Position numbers and translations under genes: made by a program
Shown here: piece by piece, positions 1,746-23,156 of the stretch
Position numbering within the stretch: the stretch's first letter is position 1
Layout: each line of letters begins with the position of its first letter
Assembly: GCA_002104945.1 (NCBI GenBank)
Contig: MCFH01000155.1
Span: forward strand, 1 to 23,156
Reading direction: 5' to 3'
DNA length: 23,156 nucleotides
Origin: Piromyces finnis finn
Taxonomy: Eukaryota; Fungi; Neocallimastigomycota
Notes under the pieces: generated by a model
Seen by the model: only the letters and a program-made list of their open reading frames with translations
What the model was told of the DNA's origin: nothing
Database searches by the model: none

Positions 1746-1946
1746 ACTTTATCGTTGAGATAAATTTACAACATCACTTTCGGCGGTAAATATTTTTATA
1801 AATTTTAATAAATACTAAAACTTTTTTAATAAAAAAAAGAAAGAAAGAGATAATTAATAAAAATGAAAATTGTTTCTTTATATATTTATTGGCTAAAATA
1901 TTAAAGTTTTATGAATTTCTTATCTTTTTCTGTTTTTATTTATTTA

Positions 1947-1970
1947 TTTGTTTGTTTGTTTGTTTGTTTG
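1947..1970. repeat. (TTTG)6 microsatellite
   Basis: Read directly; preceded by TTTA units. Mirrored as (CAAA)6 at 10582-10605. Confidence 0.9.
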
Positions 1971-2719
1971 TTTATTATATTTATTTATTATATTTTAAAT
2001 ATACTTTTATATTATTGTAATAGAAATATTTAAAAATAGTTGTATTGTACCTTAGAATAGTAATAATTATAGAGTAGCCTTTTTTTTATTTATTTTATTT
2101 TAATTCTCTTTCCAGCTTTTGTATCTTTTATAGTAGTAGGAATTATAGAATATATAAAATGTCTTTTATATCCATAGGAGGAGAATGAACATTCTTCCAC
2201 CCACAAAAACTATGTAAATACGGAAGATCCAATTAGAATGATGATTTAATATAAAAAATGAAAAATCTGTGGTGGATTACTATGATTTAATATATTGACA
2301 TAATATTATCATTTTATATTTATTAAAGTTTAATTCCATGCTAAATTTATTATTTTATATTAAAAAAATGGTTATCTACAAACTCTAAAAGATAAAATAG
2401 GAATTAATAATAAAATGATGAATTGAGTTTTATTCATTCCTCTTTCAAATAATAAAGCAAAAAAAGTATAATTTGCAATGTTCAATAATCTTTATTTCTT
2501 TCTTACTATTTTAATATTAATTCATTAATGTCAAAATTATTATTTAGTTCATTTAATTCAATCTTTACAGATTTTCTTTTCTTTTTTTTCTTTTCTTTTT
2601 TTTTTTTTCACCAATCAATATCAAAATTTAATTTTATTCCATGTAATGTTTTAATGTACGTAAAATTATTTATATATACAAATAATAAAGACTTTTTTTT
2701 TATTATATAGAATTTTTAA

Positions 2720-2751
2720 AATAGACAAATTTCTTTTAGAATTTGTCTATT
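2720..2751. repeat. Short near-perfect hairpin (14-15 bp stem, 3-nt loop)
   Basis: aatagacaaatttct-ttt-agaatttgtctatt; mirrored at 9807-9840. Confidence 0.8.
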
Positions 2752-4060
2752 CTTTAGTAAATAGTAATTATTATTCCTTCTTATTTTTTAATATTTCAAT
2801 AGTAAAATTATTTTTTAATTATTTTATTATAACACTTTTATTACAAGGCAAGAGAAAAATTTACTTTTTTCTAAACAACTACAAATAATGAATAAATTTG
2901 AAAAATTTTGAATGTAACCATTTAATATGTATTAATTTAAATTAATATATGAGCCAATTAATTCATTTTTCCAATTAAATTAATATTTCACAAATCAAAG
3001 AAATTCTCCTCCCAAAAAAAAGAGTTTAACTCTCAATAAAATCTTTAAGATATTTTCAATATTATAATATTAAGAAAGTGACTTAATATTTTTTGTTAAG
3101 TCAAGTATTTTCCTTTTTAGTTTTTGATGCATTGAGGGTAATTGAACAGAATCTTTTGAATCCATATGGATAATAGTTTTTATCTCTTTACTAGAGGTTT
3201 TGGAGGTATCGCTGTTATCCAATTAACTTCAAGTTCAAATGACAAAACAGCATAGTAGTTATTAGAAAGAATGAAAAAATATTTAGTTTTTCATATATAG
3301 CATGACTATTTAAGATCTTTCTAGATCTTTAAAATCACCTTTTTTTTTAGCAAGAAAGAGAATACTTCTTACTTGTATTTAATTTATTAAATTTTCATTA
3401 AATTAAGTAATAATACGAATTGATAATTAATGGATAATATTAATATAATTATATATATAAATAAAATTATAAATATAAAAAGATAAAATATAAAAAATTA
3501 TTCTGGTTGCATAATAGTTTGATGAATTATTGCAAATAAGTAATTGATTGATTTTTATTCCATAAACTTCCGATATATTTGCTTTCTTCTAATGTTCTTT
3601 GTTTTGTTCCTAACATCCACTATTAATTTTGTAGAGAGATGAATTCATTTTAATTTATACATTTAATTAGAATCAGTTAAATTTATAAATTAATAAAAAT
3701 TATTAGTTTTTTCTTATCTGACACTGACATGAAAGTAAAGACAATTATTACCATAGCATTCTTTTAAATAGTCACAATGACATTTTATAATACTATTAAT
3801 ATTTATGATATCCTTTTAATACTCTTTAAATATTCTTCCAATTTGTTTTTTATTTAAATATTATTTTTTACATTACTCATAGTTTTAGTATATAAAATGA
3901 TTAAATTCTTAATTTATTTAATTATAAAATTGAAAAAAATGACCACTTTTTAAATTTTCATATTATTGATGTATTTTTCTTTATTTTTGATTTTTAATAA
4001 AAAAAAACGAATCTATTAGAATTATCAGTCGTTATTTATCATTTATATTTATTATTTATA

Positions 4061-5235
4061 TTATATATTAAAAAGCGCTTTAAAAAGATTTTTATTATTA
4101 CTTTTAATATTTAAATCTGTTCCTTTTTCATTTAATATTTAACTATCTACATAATGTATTGGTGTATGTCCATAGTCATCTTGAATATTAATATTTATTT
4201 TTTCATTTTTAATTAAATGTTTTACTCTTGTTTCATTTCCTTTATCACATGCATAATGTAATAATGTCCAACCTCATTATTTTGTTTATATATAGTTATA
4301 TTATTCTTTTCAGTAGAATTACTATATTTATATTTTTTAACAAATAAATAATTGGTATTACTTCTGAAGATTCAATATTATCGTTTATTTTCATTTCTAT
4401 GATAGCTTTACATAAAAATTATAAAATTTCATTTTCTTTATTTAAATAGTTTCCAATGTTTTACTACCTTTTTTCTATTGCTAAATCCAAAGGTGTTTTT
4501 CCATTATCATCTTGAATATATATATTTCACTATCAATTAAATATTTTGCTATATCATAATTTTCATCATCAATACGTGCAAAATGAAGTAGAATTTGTCC
4601 ATTATTATCTTTAACATTTAAATTTTGTACCATTAAAAATTAAATAATTCATTAAATTTTTATTTTTTATTAAATATGTATATTGTAGTGGAGTAAATCC
4701 ATTTTTATTACTAATATTTGTATATGCATTATTTGAAATTAAATACTTTGTAATATTTCATTGTTCTTTTTACATGCAATATGTAATGGCGTATCATCTT
4801 CATATTACTTATATTTATATATACTTTATTATCAATAAATATTTTACTATATTAATATTTTCAATTTTACAAGCAATGTGCAATGGATTATCACTATCAT
4901 TATTGCTTATATTTTATAGGCCTCATTATTAATTAGATACTTCACAATATTTTCATATCCTTTTATGCAAGCATAACGAAATGGAGTCCATTTGTTATTA
5001 TCTTGTTTGTTGATATCTATACTTCTTTTTCCATTATCCATTAAATATTTAATAATTTTGACATTTTCTTTTTATGCCTTATGTCCATCCTTGTGTTTTG
5101 AATATTGATATCTCATTATTAATTAAATATTTCACAATATCTTCACTTCCTTTTTTACATGCATAATGAAAAAGAACATTTATAAAAATCAAATAATAAA
5201 ATACTTTAAAATTGTTACTGCATTTTTACATGTAT
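4061..5235 (-). pseudogene. Degenerate ankyrin-repeat gene (left-arm copy)
   Basis: Reverse complement of about 7340-8507. Translations include FHYACKKGSEDIVKYLINN, KWTPFRYACIKGYENIVKYL and GWTLLHYACDKGNETRVKHL. Confidence 0.8.
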
Positions 5236-7339
5236 TATATGTATTATATAATTTTATAACTTTATTTATATACATTTTTTAATATTATTACATTTGTAAT
5301 TAAAAGATATTTGAGATAAAACATATATAATTATTTTTCTATATATTAAATATAATAAAAAATTATTATGTAATTGTATATAAAAAAACGAAAAAGTGTC
5401 CTAGACTTTTTGATTAATTATTTTTTTGCAAGTCTTATTTAATATTTTGTTAATATTATTTATTAATAACACTAATAAAAGATAATTACAAAGTACATAA
5501 ATAGTTCATATATTTATTCTCTATTTATACTAAGAATTGTGACGTATAATTTAATACGAGAAATTCCATGACTATTTTAGTAGTATTACATAATTCTATT
5601 CTACATATTTCTAGATTTAAGTTAAATTATTAATGTTTAACTTTAAACTATTTTTAAATAGGTATAAATATATTTTAAATCAAAATTTTTTTTATAATTT
5701 ACTATTTTGTAAAATCAGGTTTAATAACAGTTATTAATTATTGATACTTTTGCATTATTTATAATTGAACTAGTATTAAAAAAACTTTACAATTAGGGTA
5801 AATACTAATAATCGAATTTGGAAATAAATGTAAGGAAATAGTTGGTCATTTTTAAATTTTATATATTCATTAAATATTAAGTTAATTTAAAATTATTTCA
5901 ATATTGGCCTTTTTCTTGCTTCCAAAATCATTTATGTATTTATTTTTTTATATACATTATCTATTAAATTAATAAACCCAAAAAGTATACTTAATTCAAG
6001 CACAACAAATATGAAAAGTCATATTAGAAATGAATATTCATTTTATTTTTATTTAACTTTATATATTTACCAAATAAATATATAAAAAGAATTATGTATA
6101 TAATATTATTAAATTTGATTTTTGGATTTTCATTTTAAAGAAATAGTTATATTTATTATTTTTTATCATTGTATAATTATTATATATTAATACCTTTAAT
6201 TATGAAATATTTGATATAACTGATATTAAATTTGTTAAAATATTCTATTTTTAAAATAAAATATTTAAGAAAAATAAAAATATTATATATAATATTTAAT
6301 ATTTTATAAATTACTTTTTATTTCGAAATATTTTATTTTAAAAATAAATAGTTTTAACAAATTTAAATAATTCAGTTATATAAAATATTTCATAATTAAA
6401 GGTATTAAATATAATTAATTAATACAATGATAAAAAAATAATAAATATAACTATTCTTTAAAATGAAAATCCAAAAATCAATTTAATAATATATATACAT
6501 AATTCTTTTTTATATATTTATTTGGTAAATATATTAAGTTAAATAAAAATAAAATGAATATTCATTTCTAAATATGACTTTCATATTTGTTGTGCTTGAA
6601 TAAGTTACTTTTTGGGTTTTTAATTTAATAGATAATGTATATAAAAAAATAAATACATAAATGATATTGGAGCAAGAAAAAGGCCAATATGAAATAATTT
6701 AAATTAACTTAATATTTAATGAATATTAAAATTAAAAATGACCAACTATTTCCTTACATTTATTCCAAATTCGATTATTAGTATTTACCCTAATTGTAAA
6801 GTTTTTTTAAATACTAGTCAATTATAAAATAATGCAAAAGTATCAATAATTAATAACTGTTATTAAACCTGATTTTACAAATAGTAAATATAAAAAAAAA
6901 TTTTGATTTAAAATATATTATACCTATTTAAAATATTAAAGTTAAACATTAATAATTTAACTTAAATCTAGAAATATGTAGAATAGAATTATGTAATACT
7001 ACAAAACTATCATGAATATTCTCGTATTAATTATACGTCACAATTCTTAGTATAAATAGAGAATAAATATGAACTATTTATGTACTTTGTAATTATCTTT
7101 ATTAGTGTTATTAATAAATAATATTAACAAAAATATTAAATAAGACTTGCAAAAAAATAATTAATCAAAAAGTCTAGGACACTTTTCGTTTTTTTATATA
7201 CAATTACATAATAAATTTTTATTATATTTAATATATAGAAAATAATTATATATGTTTTATCTCAAATATCTTTTAATACAAATGTAATAATATTAAAAAA
7301 ATGTATATAAAATAAAAGTTATAAAATTATATAATACAT

Positions 7340-8507
7340 ATAATCATGTAAAAATGCAGTAACAATTTAAAGTATTTTATATTTGATTTTATAAATTTTT
7401 TTCATTATGCATGTAAAAAAGGAAGTGAAGATATTGTGAAATATTTAATTAATAATGAGATATCAATATTCAAAAACACAAGGATGGACATAAGCATAAA
7501 AAGAAAATGTCAAAATTATTAAATATTTAATGGATAATGGAAAAAGAAGTATAGATATCACAAACAAGATAATAACAAATGGACTCCATTTCGTTATGCT
7601 TGCATAAAAGGATATGAAAATATTGTGAAGTATCTAATTAATAATGAGGCCTATAAAATATAAGCAATAATGATAGTGATAATCCATTGCACATTGCTTG
7701 TAAAATTGAAAATATTAATATAGTAAAATATTTAATTGATAATAAAGTATATATAAATATAAGTAATAATGAAGATGATACGCCATTACATATTGCATGT
7801 AAAAAGAACAATGAAAATATTACAAAGTATTTAATTTCAAATAATGCATATACAAATATTAGTAATAAAAATGGATTTACTCCACTACATATACATATTT
7901 AATAAAAATAAAAATTTAATGAATTATTAATTTTAATGGTACAAATTTAAATGTTAAAGATAATAATGGACAAATTCTACTTCATTTTGCACGTATTGAT
8001 GATGAAAATTATATATAGCAAATATTTAATTGATAGTGAAATATATATATTCAAGATGATAATGGAAAAACACCTTTGGATTTAGCAATAGAAAAAAGGT
8101 AGTAAAAACATTGAAAACTATTTAAATAAAGAAATGAAATTTTATAATTTTTATGTAAAGCTATCATAGAAATGAAAATAAACGATAATATTGAATCTTC
8201 AGAAGTAATACCAATTATTTATTTGTTAAAAAATAATAAATATAGTAATTCTACTGAAAAGAATAATATAACTATATATAAACAAAATAATGAAGGTTGG
8301 ACATTATTACATTATGCATGTGATAAAGGAAATGAAACAAGAGTAAAACATTTAATTAAAAATGAAAAAATAAATATAATATTCAAGATGACTATGGACA
8401 TACACCAATACATTATGTAGATAGTTAAATATTTAAATGAAAAAGGAACAGATTTAAATATTAAAAGTAATAATAAAAATCTTTTTAAAGCGCTTTTTAA
8501 TATATAA
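7340..8507 (+). pseudogene. Degenerate ankyrin-repeat gene (roughly 8-9 repeats; right-arm copy)
   Basis: Ankyrin consensus motifs DNPLHIACKIENINIVKYLIDN, DDTPLHIACKKNNENITKYLISN, NGKTPLDLAIEK and EGWTLLHYACDKGN. Both arms share two lesions: loss of the TPLH core near 7485-7505, and loss of ACxxG with a frameshift near 8410-8425. No clear start codon. Confidence 0.8.
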
Positions 8508-9806
8508 TATAAATAATAAATATAAATGATAAATAACGACTGATAAATTCTAATAGATTCGTTTTTTTTTATTAAAATCAAAAATAAGAAAAATACATCA
8601 ATAATATGAAAATTTAAAAAGTGTCATTTTTTTCAATTTTATAATTAAATAAATTAAGAATTTAATCATTTTATATACTAAAACTATGAGTAATGTAAAA
8701 AATAATATTTAAATAAAAACAAATTGGAAGAATATTAAAGAGTATTAAAAGGATATCATAAATATTAATAGTATTATAAAATGTCATTGTGACTATTTAA
8801 AAGAATGCTATGGTAATAATTGTCTTTACTTCATGTCAGTGTCAGATAAGAAAAAACTAATAATTTTTATTAATTTATAAAATTTAACTGATTCTAATTA
8901 AATGTATAATTATAAATGAATTCATCTCTCTACAAAATTAATAGTGGATGTTAGGAACAAAACAAAGAACATTAGAAGAAAGCAAATATATCGGAAGTTT
9001 ATGGAAAAAAATCAATCAATTACTTATTTGCAATAATTCATCAAACTATTATGCAACCAGAATAATTTTTTATATTTTATCTTTTATATTATAATTTTAT
9101 TATATATATAATTAATTAATATTATCATTAATTATCAATTCGTATTATTACTTAATTTAATGAAAATTTAATAAATTAAATACAAGTAAGAAGTATTCTC
9201 TTTCTTGCTAAAAAAAAGGTGATTTAAAAGATCTAGAAAGATCTTAAATAGTCATGCTATATATGAAAAACTAAATATTTTTCATTCTTTCTAATAACTA
9301 CTATGCTGTTTGTCATTTGAACTTGAAGTTAATTGGGATAACAGCGATACCTCCAAAACCTCTAGTAAAGAGATAAAAACTATTATCCATATGGATTCAA
9401 AAGATTCTGTTCAATTACCCTCAATGCATCAAAAACTAAAAAGGAAAATACTTGACTTAACAAAAAATATTAAGTCACTTTCTTAATATTATAATATTGA
9501 AAAATATCTTAAAGATTTTATTGAGAGTTAAACTCTTTTTTTTGGGAGGAGAATTTCTTTGATTTGTGAAATATTAATTAATTGGAAAAATGAATTAATT
9601 GGCTCATATATTAATTTAAATTAATAATATATTAAATGGTTACATTCAAATTTTTCAAATTTATTCATTATTTGTAGTTGTTTAGAAAAAAGTAAAATTT
9701 TCTCTTTGCCTTGTAATAAAAAGTGTTATAATAAATAATTAAAAAATAATTTTACTATTGAAATATTTAAAAAATAAGAAGGAATAATAATTACTATTTA
9801 CTAAAG

Positions 9807-9840
9807 AATAGACAAATTTCTAAAAGAAAATTTGTCTATT
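9807..9840. repeat. Short near-perfect hairpin (mirror of 2720-2751)
   Basis: aatagacaaatttct-aaa-agaaaatttgtctatt. Confidence 0.8.
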
Positions 9841-10581
9841 TTAAAAATTCTATATAATAAAAAAAGTCTTTATTATTTGTATATATAAATAATTTACGTA
9901 CATTAAACATTACATGGAATAAAATTAAATTTTGATATTGATTGGTGAAAAAAAAAAAAAAAGAAAAGAAAAAAAGAAAAGAAAAATCTGTAAAGATTGA
10001 ATTAAATGAACTAAAATATAATTTTGACATTAATGAATTAATATTAAAATAGTAAGAAAGAAATAAAGATTATTGAACATTGCAATTATACTTTTTTTGC
10101 TTTATTATTTGAAAGAGGAATGAATAAAACTCAATTCATCATTTTATTATTAATTCCTATTTTATCTTTTAGAGTTTGTAGATAACCATTTTTTAATATA
10201 AAATAATAAATTTAGCATGGAATAAACTTTAATAAATATAAAATGATAATATTATGTCAATATATTAAATCATAGTAATCCACCACAGATTTTCATTTTT
10301 ATATTAAATCATCATTCTAATTGGATCTTCCGTATTTACATAGTTTTTTGTGGGTGGAAGAATGTTCATTCTCCTCTATGGATATAAAAGACATTTATAT
10401 ATTCTATAATTCCTACTACTATAAAAGATACAAAAGCTGGAAAGAGAATTAAAATAAAATAAATAAAAAAAAGGCTACTCTATAATTATTACTATTCTAA
10501 GTACAATACAACTATTTTTAAATATTTCTATTACAATAAATATAAAAGTATATTTAAAATATAATAAATAAATATAATAAA

Positions 10582-10605
10582 CAAACAAACAAACAAACAA
10601 ACAAA
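10582..10605. repeat. (CAAA)6 microsatellite
   Basis: Read directly; same unit number as the left-arm copy. Confidence 0.9.
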
Positions 10606-10810
10606 TAAATAAATAAAAACAGAAAAAGATAAGAAATTCATAAAACTTTAATATTTTAGCCAATAAAATATATAAGAAACAATTTTCATTTTTTATTAAT
10701 TATCTCTTTCTTTCTTTTTTTTTATTAAAAAAAGTTTTAGTATTTATTAAAATTTATAAAAATATTTACCGCCGAAAGTGATGTTGTAAATTTATCTCAA
10801 CGATAAAAGT

Positions 10811-13800
10811 ATGAATATGAATAGCAACAACAAGTGCCATAATAATACTGAAAAAGAGTACAAGGACGATAGGATTATGAAAATAAATACACTAGAGAAT
10901 GAGAATGAAATTGATACTTCATATATAAAAGAAGACGCAAATATATAAAATGGAGTAAAGATAATAGGAATGAACATAATAGAAATGAAGATATGATTAT
11001 AAAAAGAATATAAACTTTGGAAATAAGAGTAACTTTATACTTGAAGAGAGGGAAATGAAGAAAGATAAAGAAACTATAAACGAAAATGATATTACAAATG
11101 ACAAAAAAATTTAAAGTTTAATAATGAAACTTTATCTAATGATAATATTAAAATTGAAAAAGGAAGCCATGCTTGAATACCAATGATACATTGATAATAT
11201 AAATAATAATAATAATTTTGATGGTGATAAAATAGACATTTTCGTAAAAAATAATTCAGAAGATAGTGAATCCGATTCAATAAAATTTAATAGTAAATAT
11301 AATTCAAGAGATCAATTTATCAAAGAGGATATTCAAAATTTATTTATACCCAGTATTTTTGATGATGTGATAATGGTCCTCGTGGTCCAGATGTACGATT
11401 GCATAGATATAATATAATTATTGGAATCCTAAAAATATTGATAGGCGTATTTGCAACAGCTGGTATTATATTATTAACTGTAATTTTGCTATGTATTACA
11501 ATCAATGTTGGTTATGTTTGTGTTCAAATTGATAAATAAATTCATTTGTACAAATGTTATTTTTATGTATTATTTTGATTCCTTATACAAAATTAATAGA
11601 TCAATTTGGAGAACATATTTAAGATTAATTCGTACGATAATAAATAGTAAATTTGGTTCATCCATGAATGATATTTTTATTAAAAGAGTACTAGGTTATT
11701 TCATAAGTCAAAAACTTACCTACATGACTCTTCCTGATAGATATAAAACACACCCAAAGGACTGGTATGAGAAAGTTAATATGACAGTATTTGTAATATT
11801 TATATTATACTACATCTTCCATTCCTATTAATTAGTATATGTTTTGGTTATTGGAAGATCACCGAAATTGTTTGCCTAATGTTTGTTGGTGGTGGTGCCA
11901 TTACGATATTGAGTTTAAATTTTTTTTCACGTGGTATTTTATATTTAAAGTTTTTAAAAGACTAGACGAATACTATTATAATGCACCATCTTTTGTAGAT
12001 ATTAAAGATCGTATTTATAATCAAACAAGTTATCTTAGAATAGTATACTGTAATACAAATAAGCTTAAATTTAATACTAATTATATAATTATGTATTAGA
12101 TCATTTAATTAAAATGTTTGTAGGAATTTCAATCGCTTCTTTTTTTTTTGGATCTTTTGATTCAAATGTAAAAAAATTAAGTTTTTTGTTTGGAATAATT
12201 CTAGTTCTTATTCCTGTTCGTTTTAGAAATAAAGTTCATAGATTAATTGTAAAAATGAAGATTTTTCCAAAAAGAAAACTTGAGAACAATGATCTACATA
12301 ATAAATTAAAGATAGGAAACAAGTCAATGAAGCGTTTAAGGAATATATCATTAGTAGAGAAAAATTCATACAATACTTTTATAATCAAAATAATATTAAA
12401 AATATAAAAAAAATTAATGATGATCTGTAGAAAATAACAAGGAAAATTGTTTAAAAACTTTGTAGAAAAAGAAAATAATTTAGATCGTATACATTTTGAT
12501 TCTAATGGTGATGATAATGACATATATAATAGTTTGCATAATAATGCAAATACAAATAGGATAAATAATAAAAGTGAATGTATAGGAGGTGAGAATGGAA
12601 ATATTAAATTTGACGTTGAAAACATAGATAACAAAAATGACAATTTTAATACTACAATGAATACTGATGATAAGAATATTGAAGCTATATTACCTTGGAA
12701 TAAGGAAAATTTTAATTATGGAAGGGATGTTTAACCGTTTCTTTGTTCGGTTCATAAAGAATATTATAGGAGTTGGTTCTATGGCATTTTTAAATTACTA
12801 TAAATATTCTAATAACATTGATAGTTCAAATGTCAAAACAACGAATAGTCTTTTGGTTGACATTTTTACGCATTCAATTTTTTGATAGCATTACTCGTCA
12901 AGATGTCATTCAAGTAATTCCAGCGAGCTCTGGTTTTATGTCCATGAAAATAAGGAAAATTATTTTTATTTTACTATTAATATTCGAGTTTTGTCTGGTT
13001 ATTATTATTCGTATTACCATAACAAATAACTATATACCAATGGCTTTTATTGTTATAGCTTATTCAACTTTAGCATCTATCCTGATCCCAGAAATACATG
13101 GGATGATGAAAATGTTGAAAGAAAAACCTTTCTTGATCTTTTCAAACCAAATATTAATATTCAACCAAGGATATCCTATAAGCATTTTGATAAAAGGAAA
13201 GGTTTCATTAGTAAAAAATCGAAAAAAGATATTCCTATCATGGATATTTCACTGGTATATAATGACCATGAAAATGAAAATTTATATGATGTATTAGGTA
13301 AGGAAGGTAAGTATACACCATCACCTAATGCTATTCCAATGAAAAAGGACCATGAAAGTTGTTCATATAATAATATATATTTTAATCAAGGGAAGAAGGG
13401 GAATGAATATACCAATGATTATATGATGATATTACCTATGACAATAGGAAGGAACCTACGGTACAACTCTATAAGACGGCTACAACAGAAACACAATATA
13501 AACGGAATGCTCGTGCACGTCATAATGGTTATGCAATTTTATTTGTAACCATAATAGTAATCATTGCCTCTATTTTAATTAGTATATTTCTAGACCATTC
13601 AAGAAAATATAAAACGGTACCATTTTTAGATAGTCCTAATATTTATAATCAAAAAACCAGCAATTTGTCAATGGAATATTGATGGTATTACTATTAATGA
13701 ATTTTCATCATTAGCTCAAGCCTGCTATTTAAAACAATTGACGGTGTGTTCCATTTTTGGTTGTATAATCGACCAAAATCTTCTAATAATAATTTATTAT

Positions 13801-14502
13801 AGGGGATAATAGCATTCACTCAAAAGGCGGTGTTCATTTCATCGATTTTGTTAATGAGGAAAAAAAAAATTATTGTTGTTGCAATTAGAGGAACTTCTAC
13901 CTTTGAAGATATTTTTCAAGATATTTATATTGGAGTGCGTCTGTTTTGCTTCAATTATTCGGCTTTTTTGGAACCTTTATAAATACTGGCCGAGAGAATT
14001 TGTCGCTTCATTAGTTAATTTTATTGTAAAACAATTTACAAATTCTCGACTTTATATTGGGTTGATGTTGAAAAACATATTTATGATTTAAAAATGAATA
14101 CTGATTATACTTTGTATCTTACTGGCCATTCTCTTGGTGGTGGTGTAGCTGGTGTTATCTCAGCTCATTTAGATATTCCTGCTATTACTTTTTCGTCCCC
14201 TGGTTTAGGTTATCCTACAAAACTTATGGCATTGAATTAAATAAATTAATACGAAATTTTGTTAATATCATACCCATGTTTGATCCTATACTATCATTGG
14301 ATTTACAAGTTGGGCAAATCCATAATATTGAGTGCAAGTCAGAGCAACCATTAACATGTCATAGAATGCCAATACTGTTGATACCCTGAATAAGATGTGT
14401 GGTGAGCAATCTTTATACAGTTATTGGGATGATAATGAAGAGGAAATGGTAGATGAAGAGGAAATGATAGATGGAAACTTTATTATAAGCTTAAAAAAAT
14501 AG
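10811..14502 (+). CDS. Polytopic membrane protein with C-terminal class-3 (alpha/beta-hydrolase) lipase domain, about 1200 aa; interrupted by many 1-bp frameshifts that are probably sequence errors
   Basis: ATG at 10811 (MNMNSNNKCHNNTEKEY...), an N/D/E/K-rich N-terminus, then about 8-9 hydrophobic segments. These are followed by ICQWNIDGITINEFSSLAQACY, KIIVVAIRGTSTFEDIFQD (about 13865-13925) and YTLYLTGHSLGGGVAGVISAHLDIPAITFSSPG (GHSLGG at 14124-14141). Further motifs are IIPMFDPI (candidate catalytic Asp) and ECKSEQPLTCH (candidate His). TAG at 14500-14502. The reconstruction needs no intron. Confidence 0.85.
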
Positions 14503-17500
14503 AATAAATGAAGGAATAAAGAGAGAATTCATAAAGTGATATATACATCATTATATTAATAAAAATTGGGTAGCACCAATATAAAAAAAAAAACCAAATT
14601 ATAAAATCTTTTTTCATTTTTAGAATATTTATATTTATATACATAACATTCCATAAACTAAAGTTTATTATTTTGCATCTTATTATTTATTATTTGGCTA
14701 TATTTATAAATTTTTTGAGTAGCTTCAATAAATAGAAGAAAATCATTTAAAGATTAATAATTTATAACAAAATCTCTTTTATAATCATTTAAATAAAATA
14801 AATAATATATATTAAATAAAAATCATTAGTTTTATATTACAAAACTAGGAAAGCAAAATAAACATTATTTAAAATATAACGAAAACAATGATTATATTCA
14901 TTATTATTTCATTGTCTTTTTAAAGTTTAATAATAATTGGATATTAACCAGAAAGATCTTTTTAATTTAGAATAAAATAATAATAATAAAATAATAAAAA
15001 TCACTTTATACATAAAATCAGTTTATTAGTTTAGTGTTTCATTAGGAAAAAAAAAAAAAAAAAAAAGTTTTTAATGCTATAATTCTAAAATGAAAATAAT
15101 GAAAATAATAATAATAAAAAAATAAATTAAATATTATATATATATATATAATTTAATTATATATATTTAATACAAATATATCTTAAAAAAAAAATTTAAA
15201 GATGAAATTACTTTTTTTTTTCTCTTCTTCTTCAAAATTAAAATACGTTTACTAAAAGTTATTATTACTAATTATTATAAAATAATATTACCATTTATAA
15301 TATCCTTTGAAATTTATACCTTTAAAAAAAATAATTTTTTTTTTTTTTGGGGGGTGTTATTAATATTTATTAAACTTGACATTCTTATTATTATAAATTA
15401 TTAGAATAGGTAGTATGATTTTTTTTTTCTATCATACGGAATAACGAAATCGAAAAACAAGTTTATTATATTCATTTTAAACCTTATTAAATGTGTTTTG
15501 GAAATAACCTATTTTTTTTTTTTATATTTTAATTCGTTTATTTATTATATAATTTATTACCATTACATATAATAAAAACAATTTACAACAGCAATTGAAC
15601 AATAATATTTAATTACTATTATATAATAATAATAATAGAAAATAGAAAATAATCTTTATAAACAGGAAATAAAAACAATATACTTACTATTTTAATTATT
15701 TTTTTTTAAATTCAATCATTATTATTTTTATGTGACTAAAATAAAATATATAAAATATTACAAAAACATCAAATCATTTATAAAAATAATATATAATTTA
15801 CTAGAAATAATATTTTATTAGTTAAAAGGAGGTAATAATAAAAAAGCAATTTGAATTCTTTTATTATAATTAATTAATATATAATATATGATTTAATCTA
15901 TAAAATTATTTATTTTATATTGCAAAATATACCTTACTTTATTGTGATAAATCATTTCCACAAGCAGACACTGATACTAATACTATTCCTAATAAGTAAT
16001 TGAAATTACATTACCTAATTGTAGTGTTTTTATTTTAAATTAAAATTATTGTATGTAAATGTATACATTAAATATATCAAAAATGGATCGTACAATAAAT
16101 ATATAATGGCTAAGTAATAGTTTTTTTATAAAAGTTATTAAAACATATTAACTTTAGAAATGATGCTTTATAATAATAAGTATTAATAACTAATTATCAA
16201 TGCTTTAACAATTTTTTTTTGTTATAAAAAGTTTAGTTATTTTTTATATAAAAAAAATAGTATTTAAAAATAAATAACTTTTTCTAATCTATAATTCTAT
16301 ATATTTCAATATTATTTAAAATAAAATAAACTCACATTAACTAATAATTCATTAATTTTAAAAAGAAGTTGACTTTATAAAATTAATTATTTTATTTCAT
16401 ATCTATTCCCTTTTTTTTTATTGATATATGAAACTGTATTCTTTAATTTTATTTTATAATATATATACTTTTTATTTTTGTATAATAAATAATTCTTTTA
16501 AATAAAAATAATTTTCAATTTGGTTTTAAATAGCAGTTTTTAAAGAATTATTTAAAATAAAAAGTTTGACAATAAAAGTATAATTCCAATAAAAAAATAA
16601 TAAAAAATAGTTATATTAATATAAAAATTAAAATGAATATTATAAATAATGTTATAAATATTTTAGTTTTATAATTTATAGTTCTTCATTCATAGTTTAT
16701 ATACAACATTATAAATGATTAGAAAAGATTCTTGTTTTTGTCAGGTCAGACATCCCCCTTCCTGACAGGTACAATAACATGTGGTCGGATTTTGAGACGT
16801 TCACTTGAATTAAATATAACTTTCATAGGTGACTTTTAATCATTTCAAGTTTAAAATGATATTATTATTTAATAATTATAAAATATTTAATATTCAACAA
16901 AATAATATTATATTACTCTATATATACTGTATAATATAATTTATTTAAATTCATTATTTAATATATAATGTTTAATTACATTAATATATGATTGAAATAT
17001 TGTACATTGAGCAGTCAATTATGTTGATTCTTTGTTAAAATTCTGCAAATTCGAAAATTGGAAAATATGGCATTTTCGAATATTCTAATTCTTTGAAGGA
17101 GTATTAGAAATAAATTATGTTAATTATGATTTAAATATGATATTTAACAGGTTTTATGTTCCAATAATAAATTAATGAATTATGGATTAAATGCTATTTT
17201 AAATGTAATTTAACTATTATTTGAATAATTAAACATAAAATAAAATAATAATTCGAGTGGAAAGAATACAAGGATCAAATTAAACTGAGAATTATAGTAA
17301 ATTTTCATGCTCACTGCACTTCAGCCCATAGTAATACCTTATATTATGGCCAACAATGATCAATGTTCAAAAAGTTTAATGGGATAGCCAAGGACGTCAA
17401 TGAGAAGAAAAAATAAGAAAGGATTTAACAGACAACTAATAATTTTTTCTTTTGATAAAATGTAACATCGAATCCTATTGAAAGACAAATGCAATATTAT

Positions 17501-19324
17501 ACTTAATAATAAAGTATTTATTTAAAACAATTAGTGGTTACAAAACTTTTAATAACAAATTGAATTCTTAACTTATAATTGATTATGATTAAATAAAGAA
17601 TATATTATATTTACAATTTATGAATTGAAATGAAATATTCTATTTTGTATTTTTTTAATGATAATAAATATTTAAAACAAATCATGTTTTTCAATAATTA
17701 AAAATTTCAAAATATAATGCTTTTTTAGTAAATATTGTTAATAATAAATAAAAAAAAATTATATTATTTATGGGTAGAATAAATCCTTATTAATCATCAT
17801 GATTTAGTAATAACACCGCCATAAAAGTTTTATGGGGATAGGGTATTTTCATGTAATATAACGATAGGTATAGTTATACTTTATAAAAATAATACATTTT
17901 ATATTTAATAAATTTTTAATTAAATCTTCTTTTAAATTAAATTAGAATAGGAAATGGAATCTTTTTTATTTTTATATATAAATGTTTTTACATTCCTTTT
18001 GTTAAGAGTCGTTGATTTAGGTTGTCAACTTTTTAATGTAAATTATGATAAAGAACTACCATGGTTACATTCTATTCAAACTACATATATTTATACATAT
18101 ATATTGTGGTTTGTTTATTTAATATAATACAATACATTTTAAAAAAAAAAATAATAAAAAAATACTATAATAGGATTATTATTAATGACCTTCATCTTGA
18201 TATTAATTACTTAATTATACAATTAATATTATTGTTTCAATGATTGTTTTAAAATTTGGATACTAAATTGTGGGTGATCTTCTAATTATTGTTAAGAATT
18301 CCAATGCTTAATTTCTAATATTGAAATATTTTACATTGTTGGCATCAACAAGAAGAATTTTTCTTTTCTTTTTTTTTTTCTAAAAAATTTTTAAATCCCA
18401 AAAAATTTCTAAATTTCTGTTAAAAGTATTTTAATAATTTTTCTACATTAATCTCTTTTTTTTTTTTTTATCATTTAAATTAAATATATTTAGAAATTTT
18501 GTGATTTATCTTAAACTTTGCTTGAATTACTTTTTTTTTTACTTTTTTTATTTTGAATTTGTATTTTTTTTTTCATTTGTGATATGCTATTTTAAGTATT
18601 TTAGAGATATTTGATATATATAGTATTATTGAAGACGTAATCCTACTTTTGCATATATTACTAATATTAAATCTTTTTATGATAATGCTAAAATAATTTG
18701 AAATAAGAATTATTATTATCACTTCCTTCTTCTGATTTTGGAAAAATATATGTAAAAGATATTTGAAAATTCTTTTCCTATGGATTAAATCCACAGAATT
18801 ATTTTCAAACTAACTTAAAAATCTCAATTATATTATTATTAGTTTAAAAAAATATAAAAAACATAATTTTTTTTATATTTTTTTATTTTTTATTTTTTAA
18901 AAAAAAGAGTAGAATTTAGTAGGCATGAAGATAACGTTTTTTTTTATCTTAAAAATAAAACAAAATTAAAATAATAAACATCTTTCAATTTATAAAGTAT
19001 TTTTTTTTTCCTTTTCTATATAAATCATTTATTTTTTTATTTGTTTAATTAAATATTGATTATATCACTTTTATTATTTTCTTATTTTATTTTTTTTTAT
19101 TATTAAAGAATTTATTATGTTATTTACTATTTTTTCTTTATTTTACTATAAAGTTTTTATTATTATTCATATACTTTCAATGTATATCTATTTTATTTTT
19201 TATTTTTTCATTTTTGATTAATAATATTAATAATAAAAAATTTAAAAATTGCTTTTAGTATTTATTCTTTAATGAAGTTAGAGGTTGAGTCATGCATATT
19301 ACCAGTGTTATGTTTCACCATTTT

Positions 19325-20995
19325 TCATTTAATATTATCTTCATAACTTGGAAGTAAATCTTCTTCTCCTCCAATGATAGTATTATTATTATTTGTATGA
19401 TTTAATGATTTTATATAGTTTGACTCATTTACAGAATTTAAAGGAATATCTGGAAGATTAGTTGAACTTTCTCCATTTCCAGAAATTGAAGTTGAGTTAA
19501 TGTGAACCTTATTTAAAGTAGAAAAGCTATTTCTTTCATTATTTTTCTTTTTTAAATCTCTATTTTTCCTTAAACAAGGAATATCAGGATGGTCAAAATA
19601 ATACTAATTATTCCAAATACAATGGCTATTATTAAAAAATGGATTTGTACCATTATCGGACTTTAGCATCTTTATTTAAATCATCTTTTCTTCTTTTTCT
19701 ACAACTTGTTTATTTTTATCATTATAATTATCATGAAAACTATATTATATTAAATGATGAATATTTGAATAAAAATGTTTTAATACAACTAATATAATTA
19801 TAATATATATAAACTATTATATAATAAATAAAATAAAAAAAAAAGTAAATTAAATACAATTTAGAAATATTATTATTTAATATTTCTTGAGGTATAGAAC
19901 CACTAAATCCGTTATTCCTAATATCTCTGAATATAATAAAAAGTTAAATATTATCAAGTTTTAGTTGTTGTTTGTTTTAGTTGATCATGAATTGTTTAAA
20001 AATATAATTATATAAATATTATAAATACAAAAAAAAAATTATAAAAAATTATATTTATTTATATATTCAAATAGTAAAAGATACTTTACAAATATTCTAA
20101 GTTTAACCTTCCAAGTTCAGGAGGGATAAAGCCACTTAAAAGATTATCTCTTAATGATCTATTTATTTAGTTAATAAAATAATTGTATATTTTTAAAGGA
20201 AAGTTTAATAATTTTTATTTTTATTTTTTTATAATATTAAATTATATCAATAAATAGGTACAAAATTTCCAATTTTAATAAATTTCCAAATTCAGATGGT
20301 ATTGAACCAGTAAAAGCATTATTACTAAGATATCTTTTTTTTATTATTATTTTATATAATAATGATAATGAATATTTTTAATAATTTTTTAAAAAAAAAA
20401 AAAAAAAAAATTAGAATAAAATTTATATTATCATTTATATTATGCAAATAACATATAAACAATCTTCACATATATTGCAAATTTGATAAATTCCCGAGCT
20501 CTGAAGGAAGGGAACCATGATAACCTTGATCACTAAGATCTCTATTTATCATATCGTAAAACATTATAATAAAATATATAGATTAGTGTATATATAAATA
20601 TATAAATAACTTTTAATTCTTCCTTCCTATATAAATGAAAAAGAATAATTACAGATAAACTAAACGTGTCAAATTTCCAAGTTCAGGAGGAATTGAACCA
20701 CCATACAAACCATTACTTAAATTTCTATTGTTTAATTAATTATTAAAAATAAATATTCATTATTTATACTATTAAGTAGAAATAAAAAAAAAAAAAAGTG
20801 AACTTTTTGTTTTTATCATTACATTACTGCTACGAATCCGTTTTCACATGTAATTCCATTATGAGTGCAACAATCATAATTATCAGATTCTCCTAACAAT
20901 TTATTTACTGCACTACAATCATTTACAAATACTGAAAAGACACCGTTTATTGTAAAAGTTAAATTGAACAGCAATAACAAAACCAACTTTTTCAT
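19325..20995 (-). CDS. LRR receptor-like single-pass membrane protein, paralog B (signal peptide, Cys-rich N-cap, 5 LRR exons, stalk, TM, cytoplasmic tail)
   Basis: Exons with GT-AG borders: 20995-20823 (MKKLVLLLLFNLTFTINGVFS...DCSAVNKLLGESDNYDCCTHNGITCENGFVAV), 20724-20653 (NLSNGLYGGSIPPELGNLTRLVY), 20541-20470 (DLSDQGYHGSLPSELGNLSNLQY), 20333-20262 (YLSNNAFTGSIPSEFGNLLKLEI), 20158-20090 (SLRDNLLSGFIPPELGRLNLEY), 19926-19858 (DIRNNGFSGSIPQEILNNNISK) and 19739-19325 (stalk, TM IAIVFGIISIILTILIFLV, tail ...LLPSYEDNIK*). The last exon has 1-bp frameshifts, and the true stop could be near 19262. Confidence 0.9.
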
Positions 20996-21398
20996 TTTTC
21001 AAATTTTTATTTTTTTTTTTAACTTTTTTACTTTTTCAAATTTATATATTTTTTATTAATTAAATTCTTTTTTTTTAACCAATAAAATTTTTTTTGTTTC
21101 AAATTTTCAAACTTTTTTAAAAAAAGCGGACGATTTTTGGACTTTTTTTATTTTTAAAAAAAAATGTAAAAAAAAAAAAAATCCGCCTTTTTATTTTAAT
21201 AAAATTAAAAAAAAAAAAAAAAAAATTCAAATTAAATAAATTTCTATTTTTTATTTTTTTTTATTTAAAACTATATTTAAATATTTTTTATTTTTTTATT
21301 TTTTTTTTTTTTTCATTTTTTTACTATGAAATTTTTTATTATTTTTAATATACTTTCAAAGTATACTTTTTCATTTTTTTTATTTTTAAAAATTATTT

Positions 21399-23027
21399 TT
21401 AATATTTCTTTTTTGATGAATGAAGTGGTTCCTTATTTTTTTCATTTTTTATAGTTTGAATTTTGGATTTATCGTCAGACAGTGGATATTTTTCCGTGTT
21501 ATGCTTTCCATCTTCATTTAAAACATCTTCATAACTTGGAAGTAAACCCTTTTCTCCAATGCTATTCATTGTCATTACATGGTTTATATTATTCGTAGAA
21601 TTTAAAGGAACACTATATCTGTTATTTGTAGTAATAGTAGAATTAATTACTATTGAATCATCATCATCATCATCATCATGAATAGTAGTAATAGCATTAT
21701 TAGTATTTATTTCCGTAATAGTACTGTTATAATTATTATTAAAAGAAAAACTGGGGTAGAAACAATATCAAGTGTTGTATTTTCATCATTTCCTGAAATT
21801 ATAGATGGATTAATGTGAACATTATTTACAGTCGATAAAGAACTATTTCTTACATTTTTTATCATTATCTTTTAACTTTTTATTTTTTTTTATAACGAGG
21901 AATAATAAAATGCTTGAAACAATACCAATTATTCCAAACACAATAACTATTGCTAATAATGTATTACTACCACCCTTATCGGATTTAGTATCCTTATTTA
22001 AAGTATCCTTATTTAAATCATTATCAATAATTAATTTATCTGATTCTTCTTTTTCGGGAACTTGTTTGGTACTATCATCATAATTATAAAATTTACTATA
22101 TATAGACAGTACAAATAATTAATATTAATATTTATTTTAAAATAAAAAACTTTTTGTATTCATTTTATATATAATCATTAAAATGATAATCAACATAATT
22201 TAAAACTATAAACTATTTTCAATATAATCATATTGAGCAACGATATAAAAAGTACATCTATTTATATAAAAAAAAAAGAAATTACTTACAATTCATCATA
22301 TGGACGATTTAATATTTCTTGTGGCATAGTACTACTAAATCCGTTATTACTAATATTTCTGAATATCATACATGATTTATTAGATATTATTCAATTTTAG
22401 TTGTTGTTGTTGTTGTTGTTGTTTTTAAGTGGTCATGAATTATTTTTATTTTATAAATAAATAATTAATTAATTATTAATAAAGAAGCAATGATTATATA
22501 TAAACAAATATTATTAATTACATCCATCTCAATTTTAATAAATTTCCAAGCTCAGGTGGAATGGAACCACTAAAGTTATTATTTTCTATCCATCTATTAA
22601 TAACATATTTATAATAATTTTAAAAAAGAATAAAAAATAATGTAAATAATATAATTTTTTTTTTTTTTTGTTTCATTTAAAATAAGAATTAATATAATGA
22701 ATAGATAAACAAATAATATTATAAAAATCATTTACAAAGTTCTCAAGCTTGATAACTTTCCAAGTTCAGGTGGAAGGGAACCACTTAAATAATTATCACT
22801 TAATCGTCTATTTTTTTTTTTTTTTAATTAATGAAAGAGTTTTATATTTCTAATTAGAATAAATAACATTATTTTATATTTTTTTTATTTTAATAAATTA
22901 AGAATTTAAAAATAAATAAATAGATTAAACAGATAGTATATATAAATTCATTACGGTGAATCCAATTCTGTTAAATTTCCAAGTTCAGGTGGAATAGAAC
23001 CACTTTAATTTATTATCCACTAAATTT
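21399..23027 (-). CDS. LRR receptor-like single-pass membrane protein, paralog A (5' end beyond the window)
   Basis: Exons 23027-22955 (73 nt, one extra A; NLVDNKLSGSIPPELGNLTELDS), 22807-22736 (RLSDNYLSGSLPPELGKLSSLRT), 22593-22522 (WIENNNFSGSIPPELGNLLKLRW), 22358-22290 (NISNNGFSSTMPQEILNRPYDE) and 22095-21399 (stalk, TM TLLAIVIVFGIIGIVSSILLFLVI, N/T/D-rich tail with LLPSYEDV, TAA). There is no GT donor between 23030 and the window end, so the upstream exon lies outside the window. Confidence 0.88.
21658..21678. repeat. (TCA)7 trinucleotide repeat encoding poly-Asp in the tail of paralog A
   Basis: The minus strand reads cat gat gat gat gat gat gat gat tca (H-D7-S). Confidence 0.85.
21987..22016. 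repeat. 15-bp in-frame tandem duplication (LNKDT x2) in the stalk of paralog A
   Basis: agtatccttatttaa occurs twice; paralog B has one unit (LNKDAK). Confidence 0.85.
22400..22423. repeat. (GTT)8 intronic microsatellite
   Basis: Read directly; lies inside the intron 22359-22521. Confidence 0.9.
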
Positions 23028-23156
23028 CTATTTTTTTAATTAATAATGTATTTTTAGAAATGAAAAATAAAAAAAAAAAAAAGAAAATAATGTAATTATT
23101 TTATGATTCATTGGAGGAATAAAAATTTATAGAGAGATTTAAAATAAATATTATTA

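What the first reader, a model, noticed from the sequence alone, without database searches (positions are those of the whole stretch)
19858..23027. One-LRR-per-exon cassette architecture in kinase-less LRR receptor-like genes of a probable gut fungus
Seen: all nine LRR-encoding exons are 72 or 69 nt long (one is 73 nt, with an apparent error) and are flanked on both sides by phase-2 GT-AG introns at the same point in the repeat. Any exon can therefore be skipped, duplicated or swapped without breaking frame. The intron falls inside the LxxLxLxxN beta-strand, so each putative ligand-facing strand is built from the end of one exon and the start of the next. Those junction-flanking residues vary (RLVY/DLSDQ, NLQY/YLSNN, KLEI/SLRDN, SLRT/WIENN), while the exon core GS(I/L)PPELGNL is conserved. 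Established: this is the plant-specific LRR consensus, and one-repeat-per-exon organisation is known from plant ERECTA-family kinases and brown-algal LRR genes proposed to undergo exon shuffling. Inference: this may be a combinatorially diversifiable fungal surface-receptor family for non-self, partner or substrate sensing.
Basis: partly seen in the sequence, partly recalled or inferred. Interest (0 to 1): 0.8.

Follow-up and report, generated by a model that had tools for sequence, protein, structure and literature searches.

The report
One-repeat-per-exon LRR membrane-protein genes
Two neighbouring genes of the gut fungus Piromyces finnis encode kinase-less, plant-style leucine-rich-repeat surface proteins with each repeat on its own small exon; about 36 sampled relatives, a distant fungus and (per a rice paper) plant receptor genes share this layout, and nothing shows the exons are mixed to make variants.

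Summary
The window holds nine minus-strand LRR exons of 72 or 69 nt. All are flanked by AG/GT, and all introns are phase 2, splitting the first Leu codon of xxLxLxx. The 73-nt exon is an indel error. The window is a redundant, error-laden copy of a Piromyces finnis locus on contigs C197 and C23, where that exon is 72 nt.

The layout holds across the family. In about 190 kb sampled I found 296 LRR exons (255 of 72 nt) in 41 gene-like chains. Two Catenaria (Blastocladiomycota) genes have the same layout, and a rice paper describes the same intron position and phase in plant LRR-kinase genes.

The combinatorial reading is not supported. Recent paralogs are strictly colinear. Change comes from whole-gene duplication and multi-exon block exchange. 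Exon-plus-intron unit duplication is rare (3 of about 36 genes) and I saw one exon decay. Concave-face dN/dS is 0.59, against 0.26 for scaffold positions. Alternative splicing could not be tested.

Verdict: a real but ordinary multigene family with an inherited cassette-like structure. It is a new member of a known kind, poorly annotated and not found in the literature searched. The scan reached a similar verdict four times on other DNA of this genome.

The parts
22955..23027 (-). Gene A, 4th of 7 LRR exons. It is 73 nt in the window because of a 1-base insertion and 72 nt in the clean copies. LRR exons 1-3 and the cap exon lie beyond the contig end.
   Evidence: AG at 23029-23028, GT at 22954-22953; L001:3794-3865 is 72 nt
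22736..22807 (-). Gene A LRR exon 5 (72 nt, phase 2 on both sides)
22522..22593 (-). Gene A LRR exon 6 (72 nt, phase 2 on both sides)
22290..22358 (-). Gene A last LRR exon (69 nt). The deposited model P0001 includes it.
   Evidence: AG at 22360-22359, GT at 22289-22288
21399..22095 (-). Gene A last exon: juxtamembrane stretch, TM segment and cytoplasmic tail with an LLPSYEDVLNE motif, then the stop. Indels break the frame in the window; the clean copy reads open for 232 aa from the exon's first full codon.
   Evidence: no Pfam domain above cut-off
20823..20995 (-). Gene B exon 1 (173 nt): start codon, hydrophobic signal-peptide-like N-terminus and a C...CC...C cap. It ends in phase 2.
   Evidence: missing from the deposited models P0002 and P0003
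20653..20724 (-). Gene B LRR exon 1 (72 nt)
   Evidence: its junction to LRR2 is used by deposited model P0003
20470..20541 (-). Gene B LRR exon 2 (72 nt)
   Evidence: junctions used by P0002 and P0003
20262..20333 (-). Gene B LRR exon 3 (72 nt)
20090..20158 (-). Gene B LRR exon 4 (69 nt). Model P0002 uses an internal donor that gives 54 nt; model P0003 uses the full 69 nt.
19858..19926 (-). Gene B last LRR exon (69 nt)
19262..19739 (-). Gene B last exon: TM segment and tail with an LLPSYEDILNE motif, then the stop. Indels break the frame in the window; the clean copy is open.

Best explanation
These are two tandem members, one cut by the contig end, of a multigene family in Piromyces finnis. 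I sampled about 36 non-redundant members; an earlier scan note puts the genome total at about 45-50. The proteins are type-I membrane proteins: signal peptide, a short Cys-containing cap, 4 to 17 plant-type 24-residue LRRs, one TM helix and a short tail without a kinase. Each LRR sits on its own symmetric 72-nt exon (66 or 69 nt for the last one). The phase-2 intron splits the codon of the first Leu of xxLxLxx, so each concave-face beta-strand is encoded across an exon junction. This layout is an inherited trace of ancient exon duplication. Blastocladiomycota share it, and plant LRR-receptor genes have the same intron position and phase. Shown: the family changes on an evolutionary timescale through whole-gene tandem duplication, exchange of multi-exon blocks between neighbours, occasional tandem duplication of an exon-plus-intron unit, and occasional exon decay. 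All of these keep the frame because the exons are symmetric. Inferred: the proteins bind extracellular ligands on the variable concave face. With no kinase, they either signal through a partner or are regulated by sorting. In the window's subfamily a conserved (L/P)P(S/K)Y motif near the C-terminus is a candidate docking site for WW-domain ubiquitin ligases of the Rsp5/NEDD4 type. The window itself is a redundant, indel-ridden assembly copy of the locus.
For: Organism and deposited models. The window is a duplicate that differs only by indels. Family-wide register: 298 and 289 of 323 units have AG and GT at the canonical offsets. There are 296 exons, of which 255 are 72 nt, 23 are 66 nt and 15 are 69 nt, in 41 chains with 4-17 exons and a median intron of 95 nt. 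A core DNA pattern gives 147 hits against 0 for the reversed control. Cap and TM/tail exons were found for most members, with no kinase. The consensus and entropy profile is that of a plant-type LRR, and the split codon is Leu, Ile or Met in 224 of 230 junctions. Recent paralogs are colinear with block-wise identity. Strict intron similarity gives 40 pairs against 2 in the shuffled control: 23 between paralogs at the same index and 15 intragenic in 3 genes. Scaffold dN/dS of 0.26 indicates purifying selection. Two Catenaria genes map exactly to the same architecture. Rice LRR-kinase introns split the first Leu of xxLxLxx in phase 2, with 72-nt exons (PMC3050792). The nearest solved structures are plant LRR-RK ectodomains. 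The AF2 model places the junction residue inside each strand.
Against: No transcript data were available. Splice junctions rest on GT-AG geometry, frame consistency, family-wide conservation and deposited gene models, which may themselves be ab initio. The deposited models are truncated at the 5' end and disagree on one donor. Gene A carries an in-frame TAA in its signal-peptide exon in both clean copies, so it may be a pseudogene. Signal peptide and TM segments were judged by eye, plus an AF2 helix in the homolog, not with a dedicated predictor. The ligand, the localisation and the role of the PY-like motif are inference only. The plant comparison rests on a paper: the three plant loci fetched all had intronless LRR blocks, as did a diatom locus.
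Confidence: 0.8

Rival explanations
1. One reading: the symmetric one-LRR exons form a working cassette system. Exons are skipped, duplicated or swapped, by alternative splicing or frequent recombination, to generate a combinatorial repertoire of surface receptors for non-self, partner or substrate sensing.
For: All LRR exons are symmetric, so any subset keeps the frame. Exon number varies from 4 to 17 among paralogs. Exon-plus-intron unit duplication did occur in g6, g19 and g40. One exon decayed in place without breaking the gene. The concave face evolves about twice as fast as the scaffold. In brown algae the analogous genes show alternative splicing of LRR exons (PMC11378527).
Against: Recent paralogs are perfectly colinear: every confident exon match among genes 7-12 and 26/27 is colinear, 58 and 12 matches respectively. 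Only 2 strong intron matches link different indices in different genes, and missed exons explain them. Intragenic duplication appears in only 3 of about 36 genes. Concave-face dN/dS is 0.59, not above 1. Decayed or non-coding LRR exons in introns are rare. The same architecture is conserved in a distant fungal phylum (tested here) and is described for plant receptors (literature), so it does not by itself indicate a diversification machine. The two deposited models give one exon set per gene apart from one donor choice.
Confidence: 0.1
2. The feature in the window is not functional biology: it is a pair of pseudogenes or an assembly artefact.
For: The window is a small whole contig that duplicates C197 and C23 at 98.5-98.9% identity with many indels. 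Both of its tail exons and one LRR exon are frameshifted. Gene A has an in-frame TAA in exon 1 in the better copies. C197 holds three copies in alternating orientation, which may be an assembly artefact.
Against: The clean copies of gene B are fully open, with consistent splice sites. The window's exons have zero substitutions relative to them, so the frameshifts are sequencing errors and not decay. The family as a whole is under purifying selection, with scaffold dN/dS of 0.26, and has conserved tail motifs.
Confidence: 0.05
3. On origin: the match in intron position and phase between the fungal family and plant LRR-receptor genes is convergent, or reflects a module acquired from bacteria followed by independent intron gain. 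It would not then reflect shared descent of the exon-intron cassette.
For: LRR arrays with symmetric single-repeat exons arose repeatedly: in brown-algal ROCO genes with a different exon register (PMC3341825), in Tetrahymena with 90-bp exons (PMC6564038), and in vertebrate gonadotrophin receptors (cited in PMC11378527). The same LRR consensus is abundant in bacteria and in intronless plant and diatom genes. The fungal cap is not recognised by Pfam LRRNT_2.
Against: Position (first Leu of xxLxLxx), phase (2), exon length (72 nt), repeat class, a Cys-containing cap that ends in phase 2, and a single-pass TM layout all coincide with the plant genes (PMC3050792). Two fungal phyla share the whole package.
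Confidence: 0.5

Closest known systems
Plant LRR receptor kinase and receptor-like protein genes with 'complex' structure (rice LRR-kinases, PMC3050792; by my own recollection the ERECTA/SERK type)
   Same: The 24-residue plant-type LRR consensus. 72-nt exons encoding one LRR. Phase-2 introns that split the first Leu of xxLxLxx. An N-terminal Cys-containing cap. A single TM segment. The nearest solved structures are FLS2, MIK2, GSO1, PEPR1 and similar.
   Different: No kinase domain, so more like plant RLPs. Short tails with lineage-specific motifs. The cap is not detected by Pfam LRRNT_2. The organism is a fungus. The plant gene structure was taken from the literature and not re-measured here.
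Catenaria anguillulae (Blastocladiomycota) LRR-TM proteins BCR44DRAFT_1444112 and BCR44DRAFT_1437553
   Same: The same whole architecture, measured here: a 122- or 123-nt cap exon with C...CC...C, seven or more 72-nt phase-2 LRR exons in the same register, a 54-nt last LRR exon, a TM segment and no kinase.
   Different: A GC-rich genome (53%). The repeat units, including their introns, are much more homogeneous within a gene. The tails are unrelated.
Brown-algal LRR-ROCO genes (Ectocarpus, Saccharina; PMC3341825, PMC11378527)
   Same: One LRR per 72-nt symmetric exon; proposed and partly documented exon shuffling; variable concave face.
   Different: They are intracellular ROCO GTPases. The exon register differs (the exon starts at the G of GxxP). 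Non-coding LRR exon relics, alternative splicing and positive selection were reported there and were not found, or could not be tested, here.
[quoted passage not shown]
   Same: Arrays of equal-length LRR exons separated almost exclusively by phase-2 introns, with a 'junction' amino acid encoded across exons; clonal expansion by unit duplication.
   Different: The unit is 90 bp, the LRR type differs, there are tens of thousands of exons, and the organism is a ciliate.
Fungal LRR-plus-single-TM proteins surveyed by Soanes & Talbot 2010 (PMC2939053)
   Same: An LRR ectodomain plus one TM segment, with no other functional domain.
   Different: That survey found only five such proteins in 49 fungal genomes and included no gut-fungus or blastoclad genomes. 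Here there is an expanded, tandemly arrayed family.

Membership tests
Leucine-rich repeat (Pfam LRR_1, PF00560) | Match above the curated gathering score | tested here: met
   Deposited model of gene B (P0002) scores 32.1 bits against a cut-off of 20.6. Single 23-aa exons score 13-19 bits, which is expected for one repeat.
Plant-type ('plant-specific') LRR class | 24-residue unit with the consensus LxxLxxLxLxxNxLSGxIPxxLGxL | tested here: met
   In 249 exons of 72 nt, L1, L4, I18, P19 and G23 are nearly invariant. N12, G16, L9, L14 and L22 are conserved. x6, x8, x10, x11 and x13 are the most variable.
Plant-type ('plant-specific') LRR class | Closest solved structures are plant LRR ectodomains, and each repeat has a second short strand | tested here: met
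   Tested on the Catenaria homolog with the same exon register. The top 40 PDB matches are plant LRR-RK/RLP ectodomains. The AF2 model shows two strands and a short helix per repeat. Not run on a full P. finnis protein.
LRR receptor-like protein (RLP) architecture | N-terminal signal peptide | tested here: inconclusive
   A hydrophobic N-terminus follows the start codon in gene B and in 27 of the 41 gene chains. No signal-peptide predictor was available.
LRR receptor-like protein (RLP) architecture | Single TM helix after the LRRs and a short cytoplasmic tail without a kinase | tested here: met
   A roughly 23-residue hydrophobic stretch lies in the last exon of both genes. No kinase or any other Pfam domain scores above cut-off. 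The homolog model has a helix at residues 291-317.
Plant LRRNT_2 cap (PF08263) | Pfam match to the N-terminal cap | tested here: not met
   The cap exons of genes A and B give no Pfam hit at E <= 1. By eye they resemble the C-terminal CxWxGVxC part of the plant cap only.
One-LRR-per-exon plant-like gene structure | 72-nt exons with a phase-2 intron in the first Leu codon of xxLxLxx | tested here: met
   for P. finnis; for Catenaria. The definition comes from PMC3050792.
Exon-shuffling LRR receptor system (brown-algal ROCO type) | Near-identical LRR exons at different positions or genes, and non-coding LRR exon relics in introns | tested here: not met
   Colinear exon matches among recent paralogs. 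Intragenic unit duplication in 3 of about 36 genes. Only one or two decayed exons.
Exon-shuffling LRR receptor system (brown-algal ROCO type) | Positive selection on concave-face residues | tested here: inconclusive
   Pooled Nei-Gojobori dN/dS is 0.59 (0.29-1.23) between recent paralogs. Between repeat units within g19 and g6 it is 1.07-1.6, and those pairs are not all independent.
Exon-shuffling LRR receptor system (brown-algal ROCO type) | Alternative transcripts with different LRR-exon sets | not testable with these tools
   No transcript data. The two deposited models of near-identical copies differ only in one donor choice, 54 against 69 nt.

The most novel reading that the evidence does not exclude
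The symmetric single-LRR exons are used at the transcript level. Regulated exon skipping or alternative donor use would then yield several ectodomain variants per gene, giving a gut fungus a small combinatorial repertoire of surface binders comparable to what is proposed for brown-algal ROCO genes. No transcript data were available, so this is not excluded. A second, less radical open reading is that the 72-nt phase-2 cassette is truly homologous between plants and zoosporic fungi. It would then predate their split or have moved between them, with loss in Dikarya; I put that at about 0.3-0.5.
Probability: 0.08. Interest if true: 0.75.

Novelty: new member of a known kind. Interest (0 to 1): 0.33.

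Why it matters
The value is modest but real. First, the deposited gene models for these loci are truncated: they start in introns and miss the signal-peptide and cap exon and up to six LRR exons. Domain-based censuses of fungal receptors therefore probably undercount this family. Second, an expanded, tandemly arrayed family of LRR-plus-TM proteins in a gut fungus, with counterparts in Blastocladiomycota, qualifies the older view that LRR receptors are almost absent from Fungi. Third, intron position, phase and exon length coincide with those of plant LRR-receptor genes, which gives a concrete and testable handle on how old the plant-type LRR ectodomain cassette is. It does not provide evidence for a new diversification mechanism.

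Tried and rejected
1. Direct re-measurement of the plant intron position failed. Three plant loci (P0109, P0175, P0167) and a diatom locus (P0100) were fetched. All had intronless LRR blocks, so the plant comparison rests on PMC3050792.

2. Word-based homolog searches with P0002 and P0085 were dominated by consensus-like LRR proteins from bacteria, metagenomes and plants. They gave no phylogenetic resolution, and no other gut-fungal genus appeared in the 120 rows listed. Distribution within Neocallimastigomycota stays untested.

3. Pfam scans of single exons gave only sub-threshold LRR_1 hits and nothing for the cap.

4. I rejected the idea that the 225-300-nt 'introns' hold decayed exons. Most hold divergent but intact LRR exons, many with a canonical AG and GT, and only one or two are truly decayed.

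5. A loose intron BLAST gave hundreds of spurious AT-rich matches. Only the strict criteria with a shuffled control were used.

6. Exon matches between distant paralogs (identity 0.75-0.8 against a background of 0.61) look non-colinear, but I treated them as noise.

Exons were searched one by one by reference, and whole-protein queries used deposited models (P0002, P0003, P0085).
Full report
**What is there**

The window is about 18% GC. It is the whole of contig C63 of a 56.46-Mb, 232-contig assembly.

Two genes lie on the minus strand.
- Gene A is cut by the contig end. The window holds its LRR exons 4-7 and its last exon.
- Gene B is complete. It has a 173-nt first exon (start codon, hydrophobic N-terminus, C...CC...C cap), five LRR exons, and a last exon with a TM segment and a tail.

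All nine LRR exons in the window are flanked by AG and GT. Each has the form 1 base + whole codons + 2 bases, so both flanking introns are phase 2. Lengths are 73, 72, 72 and 69 nt in gene A, and 72, 72, 72, 69 and 69 nt in gene B.

**Quality of the window**

Window 16873-23156 is a 98.5-98.9% identical copy of C197:136,667-143,000 and of C23, and the differences are mostly gaps. Within the exons the window has zero substitutions relative to the C197 copy. It differs only by indels: one in the 73-nt exon, which is 72 nt elsewhere, and several in both tail exons. The tail exons read open in the clean copies.

In the clean copies gene A has seven LRR exons, six of 72 nt and a last one of 69 nt. 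It also has an in-frame TAA in its signal-peptide exon, in both copies, so it may be a pseudogene.

**Support for the splice model**

Three deposited models exist. Together P0002 and P0003 use every LRR-to-LRR junction and the LRR-to-tail junction that I predict for gene B. They differ in one donor, which gives 54 or 69 nt for LRR exon 4. P0001 covers only the last LRR exon and the tail of gene A. All three start at ATGs inside introns or inside LRR exon 1 and miss the signal-peptide/cap exon, so the annotation is incomplete. I had no transcript data.

**Is it more than chance, and how general is it?**

- A degenerate DNA pattern for the G-S-I-P-x-E-L-G core hits the genome 147 times, against 0 for the reversed control.
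- The cap exon has 45 matches, clustered on C177.
- I fetched about 190 kb, built a profile from the clean exons and found 323 LRR units.
- Without assuming a register, AG lies exactly 1 nt before the first full codon in 298 units, and GT exactly 2 nt after the last in 289. Upstream offsets give mostly single-digit counts; in-exon offsets reach up to 61 for AG and 27 for GT.
- This gives 296 exons: 255 of 72 nt, 23 of 66 nt and 15 of 69 nt. They chain into 41 gene-like units with 4-17 LRR exons and a median intron of 95 nt. The short exon is always the last one.
- Most chains have an upstream signal-peptide/cap exon and a downstream TM/tail exon. None has a kinase.
- One 17-LRR member ends instead in a Chitin_bind_1 module.

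**Repeat class and structure**

The 72-nt exons give a textbook plant-type LRR. L1, L4, I18, P19 and G23 are nearly invariant. Positions x6, x8, x10, x11 and x13 are the most variable, at 3.2-3.5 bits. The split codon is Leu, Ile or Met in 224 of 230 junctions. Donors are mostly GTAATT or GTAAAT, and acceptors mostly AAATAG or AAAAAG.

P0002 passes Pfam's LRR_1 cut-off. The caps are not recognised as LRRNT_2.

For a structural test I used the complete deposited Catenaria model P0085, which has the same exon register. Its nearest solved structures are plant LRR-RK/RLP ectodomains. In an AlphaFold model with pLDDT above 90 across the solenoid, the concave-face strands are at residues 37-42, 64-68, 88-92, 112-116 and 136-140. 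The split-codon residues are 41, 65, 89, 113 and 137, which is the second residue of each strand in the repeating 5-residue strands.

**Testing the cassette idea**

- *Exon order.* Among recent tandem paralogs (genes 7-12 in the C177 45-75-kb array, and genes 26/27), every confident exon match is colinear. Identity comes in blocks: genes 8 and 9 are about 80% identical over exons 0-4 and 92-100% over exons 5-9. That indicates exchange of multi-exon blocks and not of single cassettes.
- *Introns.* Strict criteria give 40 similar intron pairs, against 2 in a shuffled control. Of these, 23 link paralogs at the same index, 2 link different indices (explained by missed exons), and 15 are intragenic. 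The intragenic pairs are confined to three genes: g6 (the nearest relative of gene B), the 17-LRR gene g19, and g40. Tandem duplication of an exon-plus-intron unit has therefore occurred, but it is uncommon.
- *Exon loss.* One paralog (g11) carries a decayed LRR exon with a stop inside a 281-nt intron, where its relatives have an exon. Most other long 'introns' hide divergent but intact exons.
- *Selection.* Pooled dN/dS between recent paralogs is 0.59 (bootstrap 0.29-1.23) at the five concave positions and 0.26 (0.19-0.36) at scaffold positions. Among repeat units within g19 and g6 the concave value is 1.07-1.6. The binding face is less constrained, but positive selection between paralogs is not shown.
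- *The window's own genes.* A and B differ in repeat number (7 against 5), but their internal exons are only 61-78% identical. The events are old and cannot be assigned.

**Comparison with what is known**

[quoted passage not shown] That is the position, phase and length measured here. I tried to re-measure this directly and failed: the plant and diatom loci I fetched had intronless LRR blocks.
- *Blastocladiomycota.* Two deposited Catenaria anguillulae proteins map exactly onto their loci. Each has a 122- or 123-nt cap exon, a run of 72-nt phase-2 LRR exons in the same register, a 54-nt last LRR exon, a TM segment and no kinase. The architecture is therefore inherited and not specific to gut fungi.
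- *Other lineages.* Brown-algal ROCO genes have 72-nt single-LRR exons in a different register, with reported shuffling, alternative splicing and positive selection (PMC3341825, PMC11378527). Tetrahymena has arrays of 90-bp LRR exons with phase-2 introns (PMC6564038).
- *Fungi in the literature.* Soanes & Talbot (2010) found only five LRR-plus-TM proteins in 49 fungal genomes (PMC2939053). A 2026 paper notes LRR receptor-like kinases in chytrids (PMC13618815). I found no paper on this family or its exon structure in Neocallimastigomycota.

**How it most likely works**

Shown: the gene structure, the family, its modes of change, and purifying selection on the scaffold.

Inferred: these are type-I surface proteins that bind ligands on the variable concave face. 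Because they lack a kinase, they would need a partner to signal, or would act as binders or adhesins.

The window's subfamily keeps a (L/P)P(S/K)Y-E/D motif near the C-terminus across divergent members. Other subfamilies keep other C-terminal motifs. A PPxY/LPxY motif is the classical ligand of WW-domain ubiquitin ligases of the Rsp5/NEDD4 type (established knowledge), so ubiquitin-dependent sorting or turnover is my best guess for tail function. It is untested.

**Earlier notes of this scan**

After reaching the reading above, I found four follow-ups on other DNA of this genome with a similar verdict: a real one-repeat-per-exon family and no exon mixing. Two notes concern this window itself: paralogs that differ by whole exons, and a 12.5-kb palindrome. 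I treated them as leads. The points I rely on were tested here.

Exons were searched by reference and whole-protein queries used deposited models. Nothing in the window looked human, viral or toxin-related.

**Verdict**

This is a real, poorly annotated multigene family whose cassette-like exon structure is an inherited trace of exon duplication. It is shared with another fungal phylum and, per the literature, with plants. It is not a demonstrated diversification machine.

Noticed in passing
window 1-23156; window 16873-23156 against L001, L002 and L003: The window is a whole small contig. Its right third duplicates C197 and C23 and differs from them mostly by indels. C197 itself carries three copies of the gene pair in alternating orientation, with a junction near C197:149,385. 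This looks like a long-read assembly artefact or a real inverted duplication.
   Followed up: partly
window 1-12555: ORF fragments at 81-1128 (-) reappear at 11484-12404 (+), and those at 2489-2707 (+) reappear at 9839-10069 (-).
   Followed up: no
L001:3018-3020 (C197:136,018-136,020), outside the window: Gene A has an in-frame TAA in its signal-peptide exon in both clean copies, and its deposited model (P0001) is truncated to the last LRR exon plus the tail. It may be a pseudogene.
   Followed up: partly
L014:8161-8328 (-) = C177:242,161-242,328; LRR exons at C177:242,667-245,313 (-): A family member with 17 single-LRR exons ends in a Chitin_bind_1 (hevein-like) module instead of a TM segment and tail. 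Its introns are mutually 70-90% identical, which indicates expansion by duplication of exon-plus-intron units.
   Followed up: partly
C177:~52,778 (-), in L007: A decayed LRR exon with a stop and no acceptor lies inside a 281-nt intron of gene g11, where paralogs have an exon. This is an example of exon loss that keeps the frame.
   Followed up: partly
last exons of genes on C165, C170, C197 and C3, and window 21399-22095 and 19262-19739: A (L/P)P(S/K)Y(E/K/N)(E/D) motif near the C-terminus is conserved across the window's subfamily. Other subfamilies keep different C-terminal motifs, for example ISFGSENHPP and FVNTFEDES.
   Followed up: no
L024:1706-2880 (Catenaria anguillulae): The exon-plus-intron units (about 161 bp) are nearly identical to one another within the gene, including their introns. 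That suggests very recent unit amplification or concerted evolution in that species.
   Followed up: partly
window 7657-7899 (+) and 14019-14237 (+): There is an ankyrin-repeat-like open frame, and an open frame with a GHSLGG lipase-class-3-like motif. Both are unrelated to the finding.
   Followed up: no
C152:462,001-472,000 (L022): LRR exon chains with the same 72-nt phase-2 structure are followed by Cys-rich, non-TM C-terminal exons of a different kind. The cassette is therefore also used in other domain contexts.
   Followed up: no
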